Origin: Octopus bimaculoides
Taxonomy: Eukaryota
DNA length: 34,638 nucleotides
Direction of reading: 5' to 3'
Assembly (NCBI RefSeq): GCF_001194135.2
Contig: NC_068986.1
Location: 78,426,176 to 78,460,813 of the forward strand
In this document: in pieces, positions 5,745 to 20,900 of the stretch
Layout of the letters: each line of letters starts with the position of its first letter
Position numbering within the stretch: the stretch's first letter is position 1
The notes under the pieces: model-generated
Told to the model about the DNA's origin: nothing
Seen by the model: only the letters and a program-made list of their open reading frames with translations
Database searches by the model: none
Position numbers and translations under genes: made by a program

Positions 5745-6010
5745 AGCTGCATAAAAAGCACTGGTGCTGGTGCTGGTATAACATAAAAAGCACTAGTGAT
5801 GGTGCCATGTAAAAATCACCCAGTACACTTTGTTAAGTGGTTGGCACTAAGTGGGGCATCCAGCTGTAAAAACCAAGCAAAAATAGATTATGGAACTTGG
5901 TGCAGTCTCTGGCTTTGCCAGTTCCTGTCAAGCCATGCAACCCATGCCAGCATGAAAAATGGACATTAAATGCTGCTGCTGCTGCTGCTGTTGTTGTTGT
6001 TGTTGTTGCT

Positions 6011-6480: not shown

Positions 6481-6762
6481 NNNNNNNNNNNNNNNNNNNN
6501 NNNNNNNNNNNNNNNNNNNNNNNNNNNNNNNNNNNNNNNNNNNNNNNNNNNNNNNNNNNNNNNNNNNNNNNNNNNNNNNNNNNNNNNNNNNNNNNNNNNN
6601 NNNNNNNNNNNNNNNNNNNNNNNNNNNNNNNNNNNNNNNNNNNNNNNNNNNNNNNNNNNNNNNNNNNNNNNNNNNNNNNNNNNNNNNNNNNNNNNNNNNN
6701 NNNNNNNNNNNNNNNNNNNNNNNNNNNNNNNNNNNNNNNNNNATATATATATATATATATAA

Positions 6763-8809: not shown

Positions 8810-8996
8810 ATGCTGGTGGCATGTAAAATCACCCATTACACTCTCGGAGTGGCTGGCATTAGCAAGGGCATCTAGCAGTAGAAAACCATGTCAAATCAGA
8901 TTGGAGTCTGGTGCAGCCTTCCAGCATGCCAGCTTGGTCAAACTATCCAGCCTATGCCAGCATGGACAACGGACATTAAATGATGATGATGATGAT
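8810..8996 (+). mobile_element. Family C copy
   Basis: 'ctggtggcatgtaaaatcaccc..tacactctcggagtggctggcattagcaagggcatctagc...gcatggacaacggacattaaatgatgatgatgatgat'. Confidence 0.9.
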
Positions 8997-9039
8997 TATA
9001 TATATATAACTTAGATAACTTAGATTGGTTTCAGCCATT

Positions 9040-14126: not shown

Positions 14127-14318
14127 CATATGATATATATATATATACATATAATATATATATCATCATCATCATCATCATCGTTTAACGTCCGCTTTCC
14201 ATGCTAGCATGGGTTGGACGATTTGACTGAGGACGTACATACATTCAAACATACATTAAATATATGTATGTATATATGTATATATATATATGTATATATA
14301 TATGTATATATATGTATA

Positions 14319-15797: not shown

Positions 15798-16365
15798 CGA
15801 TTAATTTCTAATATAAACACAAGGCTTCTCTAATATAGAGAACGCAGTCAGCTAAATCAATTCCATTACTAAATTGAGGCTTTATTTTATTGACTTTTGA
15901 ATGATATAAATTGCAAATTGGTCTTAGTGAGATTTGAATTGAAAGACTCATAACTACGTACCACAAGATATCTTATCTAACATTCTAATACTTTTGCCAA
16001 ACACACCCACCTATTAATGTAATTGTCATGACTTACAGAAATGTGTAGATATATTATGAAGTAGGAGTGCTAAGCAGTGATATAATACTGGAAAGGGGCA
16101 CTGTGAACTGGTCTATGAGTATTTACACCATTGTCTACAGCAAGAAATTTTCTCCATGACACAACACAGTGAATGGCTTGTGTATTAGTCCGAAGATGCC
16201 ACAGGCACATTTGAACAATGAAGAAATTTAATTTCTGTTTCTTCAGGTTCTACTTTCAAGTCCAGACGGTGCTGACTTTACCTTTCATCTTTACCAGATC
16301 AGTGAAATAATGTATGACTCAAGCACCATGTTTGATGTAATTGACTGTCTCTCTTCTCTTCAAAT

Positions 16366-16625
16366 TTCTGGTCATAGCTGGAACACCTTTAGTCATATGT
16401 CAGCTCAATCAGAACTGATCTAAAACTAAATCCCAACAAAAACAGCCACTACATGATCGCTTGACTGGCTGAAATTAGCAGTCAAATCGCCTTCAAATCA
16501 CATTCTACCACCTTAAAGGATACGTTTGATAACGCAGTACCAAATACACTTAAAACAGATGCAGTGGTCATAGGTGGAATGCCTTTGATTATAGATTTGT
16601 TGTTCAATAAAGGTTGGTCTCAAAT
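16366..16625 (+). mobile_element. Family D, head-to-tail: tail of one copy followed by a second copy
   Basis: 'ggtcatagctggaacaccttt' (16371) and 'ggtcataggtggaatgcctttg' (16566) are repeated; the body 'cagtcaaatcgccttcaaatcaca' is shared with 1580-1610 and 30865-30890. Confidence 0.65.
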
Positions 16626-16626
16626 A

Positions 16627-16823
16627 TTGGCTTACTTTTTTTCTAGTTTACAAACAAAAAAACGAATATTATAATTGGGGTTTGTTTCTCTTTTATATAT
16701 ATTTGAAGTCATGAACTTAAGTCAAATTTGAATATGAAAAATGTAATATATGTCAGAGATTTGAAAAGTATATCTTTTATCATCATCATCAGCATTGTCA
16801 TCATTGTCATTGTCATCATCATC
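16627..16823 (+). repeat. Left arm of a ~200-bp inverted duplication (partner 18647-18859)
   Basis: 'ttggcttactttt..tagtttacaaacaaaaa..aatattataattggggtttgtttctcttttatatatatttgaagtcat...atatcttttatcatcatcatcagcat' equals the reverse complement of 18859-18700 with few differences. Confidence 0.95.
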
Positions 16824-17133
16824 GCCAGTGGGCATTGAGATAGTCCCAGTGGGCGCTGATGCCTAAGGGGGCAGTGGGGGCAGGGGTGGTAGAGAAAAAG
16901 GAGACGTTGGGAGGAAAGCAGTGGGTTCGGGGATGCTATGAATTTATTATAATATTATCATAGTATTGTATACAAATTATGTAATATTATATTACATACC
17001 AATTGATTCATAGTATAGATATAAATTAGTAAAATATAAAATATTTATTTATACATAGAAACAGGGGTGGGGGTGCTGAGGGTATTATGTGGCCATGAAG
17101 CGGGCAGTGACCTAAAAATTTTGAGAACCTCTG
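16824..17133 (+). mobile_element. hAT-type MITE lacking its 5' terminus
   Basis: GC-rich 'ccagtgggc..cccagtgggcgctg...gggggcagtggggg' head. It ends 'aaaattttgagaacctctg' (Charlie-like 3' TIR), with no matching 5' TIR upstream. Confidence 0.65.
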
Positions 17134-17229
17134 GTCTAAACTAAGCCACAACCATAACAATAGTAATATTAGTGACAATAGATGATACATTAATGTCAGT
17201 TTGAAATACTGTTATTACAAGTTAACACC

Positions 17230-17318
17230 AGTCAGGAAGGGCATCTAGCTATAAAAAATTCACCTAAAAATTTCAATTCATGCCATCTTAGATAAACAGA
17301 CGTCAAAGTGATGATGAT
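17230..17318 (+). mobile_element. Old family C fragment whose (GAT)n tail was the target of the RTE insertion
   Basis: 'cagtcaggaagggcatctagctataaaa...agacgtcaaagtgatgatgat'. Confidence 0.7.
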
Positions 17319-18646
17319 CATCATCATCATCATCATCGTTTAACGTCCGCTTTCCATGCTAGCATGGGTTGGACGATTTGACTGAGGACTGGTGAAACCG
17401 GATGGCAACACCAGGCTCCAGTCTGATTTGGCAGAGTTTCTACAGCTGGATGCCCTTCCTAACGCCAACCACTCAGAGAGTGTAGTGGGTGCTTTTACGT
17501 GTCACCCGCACGAAAACGGCCACGCTCGAAATGGTGTCTTTTATGTGCCACCCGCACAAGCCAGTCCAGGGGCACTGGCAACGATCTCGCTCNNNNNNNN
17601 NNNNNNNNNNNNNNNNNNNNNNNNNNNNNNNNNNNNNNNNNNNNNNNNNNNNNNNNNNNNNNNNNNNNNNNNNNNNNNNNNNNNNNNNNNNNNNNNNNNN
17701 NNNNNNNNNNNNNNNNNNNNNNNNNNNNNNNNNNNNNNNNNNNNNNNNNNNNNNNNNNNNNNNNNNNNNNNNNNNNNNNNNNNNNNNNNNNNNNNNNNNN
17801 NNNNNNNNNNNNNNNNNNNNNNNNNNNNNNNNNNNNNNNNNNNNNNNNNNNNNNNNNNNNNNNNNNNNNNNNNNNNNNNNNNNNNNNNNNNNNNNNNNNN
17901 NNNNNNNNNNNNNNNNNNNNNNNNNNNNNNNNNNNNNNNNNNNNNNNNNNNNNNNNNNNNNNNNNNNNNNNNNNNNNNNNNNNNNNNNNNNNNNNNNNNN
18001 NNNNNNNNNNNNNNNNNNNNNNNNNNNNNNNNNNNNNNNNNNNNNNNNNNNNNNNNNNNNNNNNNNNNNNNNNNNNNNNNNNNNNNNNNNNNNNNNNNNN
18101 NNNNNNNNNNNNNNNNNNNNNNNNNNNNNNNNNNNNNNNNNNNNNNNNNNNNNNNNNNNNNNNNNNNNNNNNNNNNNNNNNNNNNNNNNNNNNNNNNNNN
18201 NNNNNNNNNNNNNNNNNNNNNNNNNNNNNNNNNNNNNNNNNNNNNNNNNNNNNNNNNNNNNNNNNNNNNNNNNNNNNNNNNNNNNNNNNNNNNNNNNNNN
18301 NNNNNNNNNNNNNNNNNNNNNNNNNNNNNNNNNNNNNGAAGTTGTTTCCTGTTTGTTTGCAGTCTTTATTGCACCTGAACATCTGCCACAAAACAAAAAC
18401 TAACTTGCTAGTTAACCTGCCTTTGATGTTGCTGCACCTCTTATGTGTCCATAGCTTGCACCGGGTACATCTTATAGAGTTACTACCTACTCCTTTTCTA
18501 CATACTGAGCAGGGCCATCTACCTGAAGGGGTTTGTGTTTTATCTACCTTCCTACTTATTAGGATTTTGGTTTTAGCTAGGTTGACTCTAAGGCCCTTCA
18601 ATTCTAGACCTTGCTTCCACACCTGAAACTTCTCCTCTAGTTCTGG
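17319..18646 (-). mobile_element. Young 5'-truncated RTE LINE (RT C-terminal part with PHD-like insert, 745-N gap, 3' UTR and (GAT)n tail)
   Basis: Minus strand reads PELEEKFQVWKQGLELKGLRVNLAKTKILIS...WPCSVCRKGVGSNSIRCTRCKLWTHKRC...F/CGRCSGAIKT. The 3' UTR 17592-17337 ends 'ggaaagcggacgttaaacgatgatgatg'. The gap size is compatible with the missing ORF2 remainder. Confidence 0.9.
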
Positions 18647-18859
18647 GTGATGACAATGACAACCATGATGATGATGATGCTGATGATGATGATGCTGATG
18701 ATGATGATAAAAGATATATTTTTCAAATCTCTGACATATATTACATTTTTCATATTCAAATTTGATTTAAGTTGATGACTTCAAATATATATAAAAGAGA
18801 AACAAACCCCAATTATAATATTTTGTTTTTGTTTGTAAACTATAACAAAAGTAAGCCAA
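18647..18859 (-). repeat. Right arm of the inverted duplication (includes the continuation of the GAT/GAC tail)
   Basis: Reverse complement of 16627-16823; see finding. Confidence 0.95.
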
Positions 18860-19249
18860 AAACAAAGAAATCATAGACTTGTACAAAACTGAAGGAATAG
18901 TAAATGAAGATTTATGATTTTAAAGATTTTCTAGTGAATAAATATTTTTATTTTTATGACAGTGATTTACTGCTTAAATTTATGACATAATGAATTGCTG
19001 CTTGAATTTCATTGTTTTATGAGTGGGGCAGGAACAAATTACTGCCCCAAAATTTGGTGGATATATTTATTGATATAGTTACATTTGGTTAAAGCTAGGA
19101 ATGGCTATTTACTTAAAAATTTAGCTTGGTTCTGGGTTAGATTTCTGCTGTACTTTGGGTTGATCAAAACCTTCTGTCAGAACATCTGTTTAAGAAGATG
19201 GTAAAGATGAACTGCCTGCATTAAGGAAGACAAAGGCTAAGAAATTGTA

Positions 19250-20900
19250 ATCTGAATGTGAAACAAGTGTCTGTCTGCTTTAGAGCAGTTTCCAATAGAC
19301 TGAATGCATGTTGGCCTCCTGCAGTTGTCTTGAGTTAGTTTTGTCACTGGATCCATCTTTCTCATAGCAAAGACAGTGATATGAGGGGAATGTACATCCC
19401 AGCATCATTACCAATTTGCACTGGGCTGACAACCTCCCTTGCAATACAAATCATGGATATTAAATCTCAAGGTATTGTCATTGCTGTTGAGGCTGTTACA
19501 AATATATTATGATGAACTACTGCCACTTCTGCAGTTTCATTACTCACAAATGTATACAGTAAGTGTAGCATAGTCAGTGGCAGCTATGATACTCTGATAG
19601 TCTGCATGAGATGGAATTAAACATCTTCGGATATCTAACCATACAAGCAGTAAACTTTGGTGATTCTGCCTCACCTCCTTATGGCAGCATTATTGATGGG
19701 AGCTGTTCAGTACAACTTCCTTTCATCTTGCTTGTGCATCATTCAATCCCATCATCTGTTTTGCCAAGATAATGGAGCAATACATTCTAGCAACCTGTGT
19801 ATAGTTTATACATAACATTTTAGTCTGTAATAAGTAGGTAGATTTTGGCCTCATGAGTCTCTCTCTATGCACAGATATGTATGCAAACATCAACCAACCT
19901 GGCTCATTGGGTTCAATGTCCATGACCTTTTCACATGTGTTGATGGGAGATTCCTTGTAGAATATGAACTTCCTATATCAATAAGCAATTATTAGTTCAA
20001 CTTATGATTTTCCATTCAGTAGATTTCCACAACTGCCAGAAGAATTTCATTAGGAACTGTCAGAAGAATTTCATTAGAAGAGACTTTTACTCAGTAATCA
20101 TTCCACTGCTCATTTAACCATACTGCATCATGGTTGTGCTATTTATTTACATTTCTGAGCTCCCCACCCACAGAATATTTCAAGACTATCCCAAATTGGA
20201 GCTTTTAGAACCTTGATGGCATGGTCTTTGTTGCTGTGGCATAGAGCTTGTGGGTTTAAGTAAACTGACAGTTGATAACTGTACACTCTTGTAATTACTT
20301 ATAAGAAGAAGCCTTTTCTCAAAATTTGCATTTAAGGGCAATTGATTTACCTGTACAGGTCTCTCACAAGCAGTTCCTTGTAGACTTTGGATAGATTATC
20401 ATAAAGTTATAACTTGTGATTTCTGACTTCCTTATTCACATGGCATCTAATGATAGGATCTAACTGATCAATGTCTTATTCTTTCTCTGTCAATATTCTT
20501 TTGGAAAGAAGTAATCCATCTTGGCAGTGCGTTATCATTTCAATTGATTTCTGTTACTACCATTTGTTGACAAATGGTAATTCCAACTCAGTACAGCAGG
20601 TCATTCAATGTCCAATAGCTGGGAGCTCAATTTGTACAAATTGTTCTTTAGAAACTTGATTGATCATGGATAACATGAAGTCAGTAGGTTTTCTATTGAT
20701 CACATGTCACAGTTATTCTTTTGTCTAGTGGTTTGTTGATGTTAACAGTGAAGTAGGCTTTAAATCTTTCTGCAAGCTGTGTTTTGAGTTATTTGTGTCC
20801 TTTACTCATCTCTTTTGGCTTGTAATTTGCTCTCTCCTATATATTCCATTTTGTGTATATAAACATATTCTAAAGATTATTTTGAAAGCTGAGTCCATGA
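19250..20900 (-). mobile_element. Heavily degraded R4/Dong-like (RLE-type) non-LTR retrotransposon: N-terminal region and first RT motifs
   Basis: In order on the minus strand, with frameshifts: WTLNDLLY (~20615), PRWITSFQKNIDRER (~20523-20480), HDAVWLNEQW (~20130), PGWL (~19905), GSCTEQL/INNAAI/EVRQNHQSLLLVWLD (~19720-19632). Order and spacing fit R4/Dong proteins as I recall them. Confidence 0.65.

What the first reader, a model, noticed from the sequence alone, without database searches (positions are those of the whole stretch)
16627..18859. Local ~200-bp inverted duplication that preserves the empty site of an RTE insertion
Seen: 16627-16823 equals the reverse complement of 18647-18859 (roughly 93-95% by eye), in otherwise unique AT-rich DNA, and homology stops abruptly with no TSD. 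The right arm continues the (GAT) tail of the old element at 17230-17318 across the RTE. The left arm read in reverse begins gatgatgatgacaatgacaa, matching the reconstructed pre-insertion junction (gtgatgatgat + gacaatgacaa). The left arm also abuts a hAT MITE that lacks its 5' TIR. Inference: a template-switch (FoSTeS/MMBIR-like) event copied ~200 bp in inverted orientation ~0.5 kb upstream, deleting the MITE end, before the RTE inserted. If transcribed, the arms would form a long dsRNA stem, relevant to ADAR editing, which is extensive in coleoids.
Basis: partly seen in the sequence, partly recalled or inferred. Interest (0 to 1): 0.7.

Follow-up and report, generated by a model that had tools for sequence, protein, structure and literature searches.

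The report
Small local inverted duplication in octopus DNA
A roughly 200-base stretch of non-coding, repeat-rich octopus DNA is present twice in opposite orientation about 2 kb apart, most likely an ordinary one-off copying error, and whether it is truly single-copy could not be tested here.

Summary
16627-16822 is the reverse complement of 18665-18859: 196 aligned positions, 92.3% identity, E 1e-77 in a self-search of the window. The non-microsatellite 150 bp is 96.7% identical (5 substitutions, 2 indels). Homology ends abruptly on both sides, there is no target-site duplication, and the window holds no third copy.

Each arm is an already degenerate (GAT)n array plus 150 bp of AT-rich DNA. 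The right-arm array is the tail of an old retroelement 3' fragment (17230-17318).

The 745-N gap lies between the arms, not in them. It sits inside one minus-strand, 5'-truncated LINE. The two gap flanks agree in order, orientation and size: at least about 606 nt should be missing, against 745 N written.

The best reading is a local DNA-level inverted duplication, probably older than the LINE insertion. The mechanism is not settled. Fold-back template switching with a deletion is favoured, but a roughly 0.5-kb micro-inversion by staggered breaks fits almost as well. No microhomology could be shown.

The dsRNA/ADAR idea is supported only by a folding calculation. This is an ordinary feature of low interest.

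The parts
16627..16778 (+). Left arm, non-microsatellite part (152 nt, 22% G+C)
   Evidence: 145/150 identical to the reverse complement of 18709-18859. Occurs only twice in the window.
16779..16823 (+). Left arm, imperfect (ATC)n array. Read on the other strand: GAT GAT GAT GAC AAT GAC AAT GAT GAC AAT GCT (GAT)4
   Evidence: Shares the interruptions GAC AAT GAC AA and GCT with the right-arm array. Homology ends at 16823|16824.
16824..17133 (.). Spacer, part 1: remnant of a possible hAT-like non-autonomous element. It has one TIR-like end (CAGAGGTTCTCAAAATTTTTAGGTC, minus strand, 17109-17133) and no partner TIR.
   Evidence: The TIR-like word occurs once in the window. No other copy of the segment is in the window. 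Family assignment was not tested.
17134..17229 (.). Spacer, part 2: unassigned DNA. 17134-17141 (GTCTAAAC) would be the 8-bp target-site duplication if the neighbouring segment is a hAT element.
   Evidence: Read. 16617-16624 (GTCTCAAA), 2 nt before the left arm, matches 6/8, but this is near chance (about 0.02).
17230..17318 (+). Old, diverged 3' fragment of the (GAT)n-tailed retroelement family, ending ...GACGTCAAAGT GAT GAT GAT
   Evidence: Aligns with six other copies in the window. All end ...GACGTTAAA-N(GAT)n (alignment A1).
17319..17592 (-). 3' untranslated region and (GAT)n tail of a LINE on the minus strand (left flank of the gap)
   Evidence: Other copies lie at 22819-22999, 8811-8999, 5801-5990 and 14162-14234. 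The segment has no similarity to the C-terminal parts of homologous proteins.
17593..18337 (.). Assembly gap (745 N) inside the LINE
   Evidence: At least about 606 nt of coding sequence is expected to be missing.
18338..18646 (-). LINE reverse-transcriptase fragment: the part just after the YADD box plus a PHD-type zinc finger. It carries one frameshift and is 5'-truncated at 18646 (uncertain by about 3 nt).
   Evidence: Translation. Pfam PHD E 4.5e-5. 75-94% identical to Octopus bimaculoides proteins. Alignment A2. tblastn aligns P0007 residues 8-110.
18647..18708 (+). Right arm, imperfect (GAT)n array: GT GAT GAC AAT GAC AAC CAT (GAT)4 GCT (GAT)4 GCT (GAT)4. Read as the remainder of the old element's tail.
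18709..18859 (-). Right arm, non-microsatellite part (151 nt)
   Evidence: Homology ends at 18859|18860.

Best explanation
This is a one-off, local, DNA-level inverted duplication in repeat-rich non-coding DNA of an octopus, Octopus bimaculoides or a close relative.

Shown: an old retroelement 3' fragment (17230-17318) carries a (GAT)n tail. That tail, already degenerate, plus the next 150 bp of flanking DNA now occurs twice in opposite orientation. A 5'-truncated LINE lies between the old element's body and the right-hand copy.

Inferred: the right arm is the original, and the left arm is a copy laid down about 0.5 kb away. During replication or repair of a break, a 3' end folded back on nearby sequence, copied about 200 nt of the opposite strand and was rejoined, with loss of adjoining DNA (the missing end of the neighbouring element). 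The LINE inserted later into the old (GAT)n tail, raising the spacer from about 0.5 kb to about 1.8 kb.

Nothing indicates a function. If the region is transcribed through both arms, they could pair into a roughly 195-bp double-stranded RNA.
For: The repeat itself:
- 196 nt, 92.3% identity, E 1e-77; 96.7% in the non-microsatellite part.
- It is the closest and the most similar long pair in the window. Pairs from dispersed families there are mostly 70-88% identical and usually occur three or more times. The arm occurs only as this pair.

Why a DNA-level copy:
- The right-arm (GAT)n directly continues an element whose family always ends in (GAT)n. The left arm therefore carries another element's tail without that element's body.
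- The two arrays share the same interruptions, including those at the far end of the array. Independent retroposition events would not be expected to share these.
- There is no target-site duplication, no new tail beyond the outer end, and no extended flank homology.

The gap:
- Both arms lie inside contigs, with different unique DNA on each side.
- The gap flanks are collinear parts of one LINE. The 3' UTR and tail lie on the left; the RT fragment ending at residue 110 of the 311-aa homologue P0007 lies on the right, on the same strand.
- About 201 aa (at least 606 nt) should be missing, against 745 N.

Order of events:
- The LINE 3' end is 73/73 identical to another copy (14162-14234), whereas the arms differ by 3.3%.
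Against: - Genome-wide copy number of the arm is unknown. This is the one test that could overturn the reading, and it could not be run.
- No microhomology is visible at the sides of the two left-arm junctions that can be read. The deleted sides are unknown.
- 200 nt is long for the templated insertions usually described for polymerase-theta end joining (from my knowledge of that literature; papers found).
- A staggered-break micro-inversion predicts exactly the same present-day sequence.
- The inner end of the left arm coincides with the body/tail boundary of the old element. A random breakpoint does not predict that.
- The 'deleted MITE end' depends on an unverified element assignment.
- The relative orientation of the arms depends on a scaffold join.
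Confidence: 0.4

Rival explanations
1. A micro-inversion of about 0.5 kb by staggered breaks. Two single-strand (or chromatid) breaks about 200 nt apart flanked the segment now duplicated, and a third break lay about 0.5 kb away. Fill-in and end joining inverted the 16824-17318 segment and left an inverted copy of the 200 nt at each end. In this reading the left arm keeps its ancestral outer junction and the right arm keeps its ancestral inner junction.
For: The layout is exactly arm - segment - inverted arm, with abrupt ends, no target-site duplication and no repeat family at the breakpoints. Ranz et al. 2007 (PMC1885836) report inverted duplications of non-repetitive sequence at 17 of 29 Drosophila inversions and propose staggered breaks. 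The right arm is contiguous with the old element's tail, as this model requires.
Against: If 16824-17133 is a broken element, its other half should begin at 18860. The only TIR-like match there (19175-19188, 11/14) scores within the range found in other 1-kb windows. The described cases are inversions much larger than 0.5 kb. There is no outgroup to polarise the junctions.
Confidence: 0.22
2. The arms are two copies of a dispersed repeat. Either they are a short retroposon with an (ATC)n tail, one copy of which primed on the old element's (GAT)n array, or they are the long terminal inverted repeats of a foldback-type or DNA transposon that later acquired nested insertions.
For: Both copies have the same outer end and both finish in a microsatellite, as full-length retroposon copies would. 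An RNA with an (AUC)n tail could anneal to a nicked (GAT)n strand, so insertion next to the old tail is mechanistically natural (inference). About half of octopus genomes is repeats (abstract of PMC8967140, listed). Copy number could not be measured.
Against: No target-site duplication flanks either copy or the pair. The window has no third copy, although other families occur 3-7 times. Rfam gives no match in the window, so no tRNA-, 5S- or 7SL-like head was found. The arrays share degenerate interruptions at the far end of the tail. 96.7% identity would imply a very young family, yet both copies assembled without breaking a short-read contig (inference). Inner ends made of microsatellite are not typical of TIRs.
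Confidence: 0.2
3. A scaffolding artefact. Both arms exist, but the contig starting at 18338 is misplaced or misoriented, so the arms are not close inverted neighbours.
For: The arms sit on different contigs joined across 745 N. Full-length LINEs are not assembled in the short-read O. bimaculoides reference (PMC9115989).
Against: The two gap flanks are the expected consecutive parts of one LINE on one strand, and the size is compatible. The arms differ by substitutions and indels and have different flanks on both sides, so they are not two alleles of one site.
Confidence: 0.08
4. An RNA-level copy: 3' transduction. A read-through transcript of the old element was reverse-transcribed and truncated at its tail, leaving only tail plus flank.
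For: The copied unit starts exactly at the old element's tail and continues into its 3' flank.
Against: No new tail follows the outer end at 16626, and there is no target-site duplication. The copy would lack the 3' UTR that such elements are thought to need for recognition (general knowledge, not tested).
Confidence: 0.03

Closest known systems
Inverted duplications from fold-back or template-switch synthesis (FoSTeS/MMBIR; snap-back synthesis in alternative end joining, e.g. PMC4912351, PMC5068794, PMC5728401 found)
   Same: A short stretch is copied in inverted orientation close to its template. The ends are abrupt, there is no target-site duplication, and neighbouring DNA was probably lost.
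   Different: No junction microhomology could be shown. About 200 nt is longer than typical templated insertions (my knowledge of that literature). This is a single fixed event seen in one assembly, so the process itself is inferred.
Inverted duplications at inversion breakpoints from staggered breaks (Ranz et al. 2007, PMC1885836)
   Same: Inverted copies of non-repetitive sequence flank a segment, with no repeat family at the breakpoints.
   Different: The putative inverted segment is only about 0.5 kb. Its inversion cannot be shown without an outgroup. Only one duplication is present, so only one break pair would have been staggered.
Nearby inverted repeat pairs as ADAR substrates (Zhang et al. 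2023, PMC9989829)
   Same: The pair meets that paper's computational criterion for a potential intramolecular dsRNA: a reverse-complement match of at least 80% over at least 50 nt within a 4-kb window. The predicted duplex energy is -267 kcal/mol.
   Different: That paper concerns pairs of dispersed young repeats. Here the pair seems to be a local duplication. Transcription and editing were not tested.
Microsatellite-tailed non-LTR retrotransposons of octopus (RTE-2_OV, PMC9115989)
   Same: An APE-type LINE with a microsatellite tail, not assembled at full length in the short-read reference.
   Different: [quoted passage not shown] Here at least 254 nt of non-coding sequence precede the tail. 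Clade membership was not tested.

Membership tests
Template-switch / fold-back inverted duplication (FoSTeS/MMBIR-like) | An inverted copy lies close to its template | tested here: met
   The arms are 1842 nt apart now, and about 495 nt apart with the LINE removed.
Template-switch / fold-back inverted duplication (FoSTeS/MMBIR-like) | Microhomology at the switch junctions | tested here: inconclusive
   There is 0 nt on the readable side of 16626|16627 and of 16823|16824. The other side of each junction was deleted and is unknown. The inner junction lies at the end of a microsatellite.
Template-switch / fold-back inverted duplication (FoSTeS/MMBIR-like) | The copied sequence is otherwise single-copy | not testable with these tools
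   Only two copies occur in the 34.6-kb window. No cephalopod genome is reachable. The arm 30-mer is absent from JGI metagenomes, which says little.
Inversion with staggered-break duplications | The segment between the arms is inverted relative to the ancestral state | not testable with these tools
   This needs an orthologous locus from another species or haplotype.
DNA transposon / foldback element (arms as TIRs) | A target-site duplication flanks the two termini | tested here: not met
   The flanks CTCAAATA and AAACAAAG match at 2/8, and shifted registers give no match.
DNA transposon / foldback element (arms as TIRs) | Multiple copies with the same termini | not testable with these tools
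   None in the window.
SINE or other retroposon copies | Target-site duplication around each copy, and a family-typical head | tested here: not met
   No direct repeats surround either arm. Rfam gives no match in the window.
SINE or other retroposon copies | Own 3' tail | tested here: inconclusive
   Both arms end in (ATC)n on their common strand. In the right arm, however, that array is the (GAT)n tail of the adjacent old element, and the arrays share distal interruptions.
LINE 3' transduction | A new tail and target-site duplication follow the transduced flank | tested here: not met
   The sequence left of 16627 has no microsatellite.
   The fragment aligns just after the YADD box of RT-containing proteins. 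The full-length homologue P0051 has Exo_endo_phos, RVT_1 and PHD domains. The (GAT)n-tailed 3' end is on the same strand.
   No reference set of clades was used. The 3' UTR differs from the described octopus RTE-2_OV.
   One TIR-like end only (17109-17133). There is no partner within 3 mismatches and no second copy. The candidate duplication matches 6/8, near chance. A truncated element would look like this, so the assignment remains open.
ADAR / hairpin-RNA substrate | A long, nearly perfect intramolecular duplex | tested here: met
   Duplex energy is -267 kcal/mol. In a fold of the LINE-free sequence the arms pair along their whole length.
ADAR / hairpin-RNA substrate | Both arms are transcribed on one RNA, with clustered A-to-G mismatches | not testable with these tools
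   No RNA data are available. Eight ORFs of the window gave no Pfam match, so no gene context was established.

The most novel reading that the evidence does not exclude
Degenerate (GAT)n tails of this LINE/SINE family may be recurrent break or fork-stalling sites that seed local fold-back duplications in octopus genomes. That would create many young inverted pairs of otherwise unique DNA, feeding dsRNA to ADAR or small-RNA pathways. The hints are the breakpoint exactly at the start of the tail, and polarity-flipped (GAT)n(ATC)n tails at two of the seven family copies in this window.
Probability: 0.05. Interest if true: 0.45.

Novelty: new member of a known kind. Interest (0 to 1): 0.12.

Why it matters
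It matters little on its own. Small inverted duplications are a known by-product of replication and break repair, and this one lies in non-coding DNA crowded with transposon fragments. It has two modest uses. First, it gives a relative timeline for one locus: old element, then decay of its tail, then the duplication, then the LINE insertion. Second, it is a candidate roughly 195-bp dsRNA stem that could be looked up in octopus RNA-seq data. It would become interesting only if such pairs turned out to be systematically tied to microsatellite tails, or if the arms were hyper-edited.

Tried and rejected
- **Independent assemblies.** Exact-product look-ups of three short ORFs were made: two span arm junctions (16722-16835 minus, 18767-18886 minus) and one lies inside the right arm (18647-18775 plus). 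None is on record (one search failed). The O. bimaculoides protein P0001 is not on record either. No octopus contig could therefore be fetched.
- **Copy number.** An exact 30-mer of the arm was scanned in JGI metagenomes and found nothing. This says little. I ran no further search on the arm's 20-25-aa unique ORF pieces, because such matches could not reach significance in 5.8 billion sequences.
- **Larger ancient palindrome.** The outer flanks and the spacer show no similarity beyond shuffled controls. Rejected.
- **Other half of the hAT-like element.** No TIR partner was found. The best candidate, at 19161-19193, scores 25, while other 1-kb windows reach 30. The match of 16617-16624 to the putative target-site duplication is 6/8, about 0.02 by chance. 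Neither decides between the models.
- **Structured RNA or a SINE head.** Rfam gave no match at gathering scores anywhere in the window.
- **Gene context.** Eight ORFs of the window have no Pfam match.
- **Two alleles of one site.** Rejected, because the flanks differ on both sides and the arms differ by 3.3% plus indels.
Full report
**1. The observation**

Reading 15800-19600 and searching for repeats show one long inverted pair. A local alignment places it at 16627-16822 against the reverse complement of 18665-18859: 196 columns at 92.3% identity. A self-BLAST gives E 1e-77.

Each arm has two parts. The first is 150 bp of AT-rich (22% G+C) non-repetitive sequence, with 145/150 identical bases, 5 substitutions and 2 small indels. 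The second, at the inner end, is an imperfect trinucleotide array.

Diagnostic words of the arm occur only twice in the window. The outer flanks, and the spacer against the flanks, align no better than shuffled sequence. The homology therefore really does stop abruptly at 16626|16627 and 18859|18860. No direct repeat flanks the pair.

**2. The gap**

The window has six N runs. The one at 17593-18337 lies between the arms, and each arm is embedded in its own contig with unique sequence on both sides. The gap therefore cannot have created either arm or any of the four junctions. What depends on the scaffold is orientation and distance.

Left of the gap, 17319-17592 is the 3' end of a multi-copy element on the minus strand. 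Six other copies in the window align with it, and all end ...GACGTTAAA-N followed by (GAT)n.

Right of the gap, the minus strand of 18338-18646 reads PELEEKFQVWKQGLELKGLRVNLAKTK...CSVCRKGVGSNSIRCTRCKLWTHKRCS.... Several results place this fragment:
- It contains a PHD-type zinc finger.
- It is 75-94% identical to Octopus bimaculoides proteins, one of them named reverse-transcriptase-domain protein.
- In an alignment it starts just after the YADD box.
- A full-length relative (P0051, 1042 aa) has endonuclease, RVT_1 and PHD domains in one ORF.

Locally, tblastn aligns residues 8-110 of the 311-aa relative P0007 to 18646-18337, with one frameshift. It finds nothing of the remaining 201 residues left of the gap. 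Eight longer relatives all have 180-197 residues after the matched stretch.

At least about 606 nt of coding sequence should therefore be missing, against 745 N written. Order, strand and size all fit one 5'-truncated LINE spanning the gap. Reading-frame continuity across the N run cannot be tested and does not matter here, because this copy is already frameshifted.

A published study notes that full-length LINEs are not assembled in the short-read O. bimaculoides reference, and that octopus RTE elements carry microsatellite tails (PMC9115989). I did not test whether this element belongs to the RTE clade. Its 3' UTR of at least 254 nt differs from the RTE-2_OV described there.

**3. What was duplicated**

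17230-17318 is a diverged plus-strand member of the same 3'-end family. It ends GACGTCAAAGT GAT GAT GAT, directly abutting the LINE's tail. Beyond the LINE, the sequence resumes with GT GAT GAC AAT GAC AAC CAT (GAT)4 GCT (GAT)4 GCT (GAT)4, followed by the 150-bp unique part.

The left arm, read on the other strand, begins GAT GAT GAT GAC AAT GAC AAT GAT GAC AAT GCT (GAT)4, followed by the same 150 bp.

The duplicated unit is thus the aged tail of an old element plus its 3' flank, without the element's body. The shared interruptions, including those at the far end of the array, indicate that an already degenerate array was copied as DNA. Two independent retroposition events would not be expected to share them.

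**4. Local event or dispersed repeat?**

No cephalopod genome is reachable with these tools.
- Look-ups of ORFs spanning the junctions or lying inside an arm found nothing.
- An O. bimaculoides protein is not on record in the contig collection.
- A metagenome scan found nothing.

Only indirect evidence remains, and it favours a local event:
- Within the window, dispersed families occur three to seven times, with pairwise identities mostly 70-88%.
- The arm pair is the most similar long pair, the closest pair, and has no third member.
- There is no target-site duplication and no RNA-family match.
- In the right arm the microsatellite belongs to the neighbouring element.

I put the dispersed-repeat reading at about 0.2.

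**5. Mechanism**

Two DNA-level models predict the present sequence equally well.

(a) A copy was inserted by fold-back or template-switch synthesis during replication or break repair, with loss of adjoining DNA. The new junctions would be 16626|16627 and 16823|16824.

(b) A micro-inversion of about 0.5 kb arose by staggered breaks, as proposed for Drosophila inversions that carry inverted duplications of non-repetitive sequence (PMC1885836). The new junctions would be 16823|16824 and 18859|18860.

I looked for internal evidence to separate them.
- The segment next to the left arm has one hAT-like terminus (17109-17133) and no partner.
- Under (a), the 8 bp before the left arm might be the element's other target-site duplication. 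GTCTCAAA against GTCTAAAC matches 6/8, about 0.02 by chance.
- Under (b), the element's other half should start at 18860. The best TIR-like match there is within the noise.

Neither result is decisive, and I prefer (a) only slightly. No microhomology is visible on the readable sides of the junctions, so the FoSTeS/MMBIR label is not demonstrated. 3' transduction is unlikely, because no new tail follows the outer end.

**6. Order of events**

The left arm has no LINE sequence, although its homology runs up to the LINE junction. Its three leading GAT units match those left of the LINE. The LINE's 3' end is 73/73 identical to another copy (14162-14234), whereas the arms differ by 3.3%.

The 'preserved empty site' nevertheless rests on six bases of a slippage-prone array. 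The LINE's 5' end is uncertain by about 3 nt: GTG at 18647-18649 could be a mutated leucine codon of the RT.

**7. dsRNA**

With the LINE removed, the predicted fold pairs the arms over their whole length, and the duplex energy is -267 kcal/mol. The pair meets the computational criterion used for potential intramolecular dsRNA in a cross-metazoan editing study that included O. bimaculoides (PMC9989829). Whether the locus is transcribed is unknown, and I found no gene context.

**8. Verdict**

This is a real, small, probably local inverted duplication in transposon-rich non-coding octopus DNA. It is an instance of a known kind of rearrangement. Interest is low.

Noticed in passing
window 17309-17338 and 22823-22848: Two of the seven copies of the (GAT)n-tailed retroelement 3' end have a tail that flips polarity. 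In the element's sense the tail reads (GAT)n followed by (CAT/ATC)n, which makes a short palindromic microsatellite. At 17309 the flip is explained by the old element lying tail-to-tail. At 22823 no such neighbour is evident.
   Followed up: partly
window 14162-14234: A 73-bp fragment is 100% identical to the LINE 3' end at 17317-17389 and 93% identical to the copy at 22826-22898. This very short, very young copy suggests recent activity of the family.
   Followed up: no
window 18338-18646 (minus strand); proteins P0051, P0065, P0061: This LINE family carries a PHD-type zinc finger inserted in the reverse transcriptase between the YADD box and the FxYLG motif. A profile of this region finds 2256 proteins at E up to 0.001 in the representative library, so the arrangement is widespread.
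   Followed up: partly
protein P0005: This database protein is 94% identical to the window's fragment. It consists of a long Asp-rich stretch, which is a translated (GAT)n-like array, fused to a copy of the same LINE truncated at another point. Copies of this LINE next to (GAT)n arrays may be recurrent.
   Followed up: no
window 16617-16624 vs 17134-17141: GTCTCAAA, 2 nt before the left arm, resembles GTCTAAAC, which follows the hAT-like terminus (6/8 match, about 0.02 by chance). If the resemblance is real, the left arm replaced that element exactly from its missing end, pointing to a break at the transposon terminus.
   Followed up: partly
window 28735-28785: A 51-nt palindrome, 90% self-complementary, appeared in the self-BLAST.
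   Followed up: no
window 6481-6742, 23736-24091, 24617-25206: These three assembly gaps are flanked by dinucleotide microsatellites (TA- or CA-rich; they translate as YIYIYI and similar). They are probably unresolved microsatellite arrays rather than missing unique sequence.
   Followed up: no
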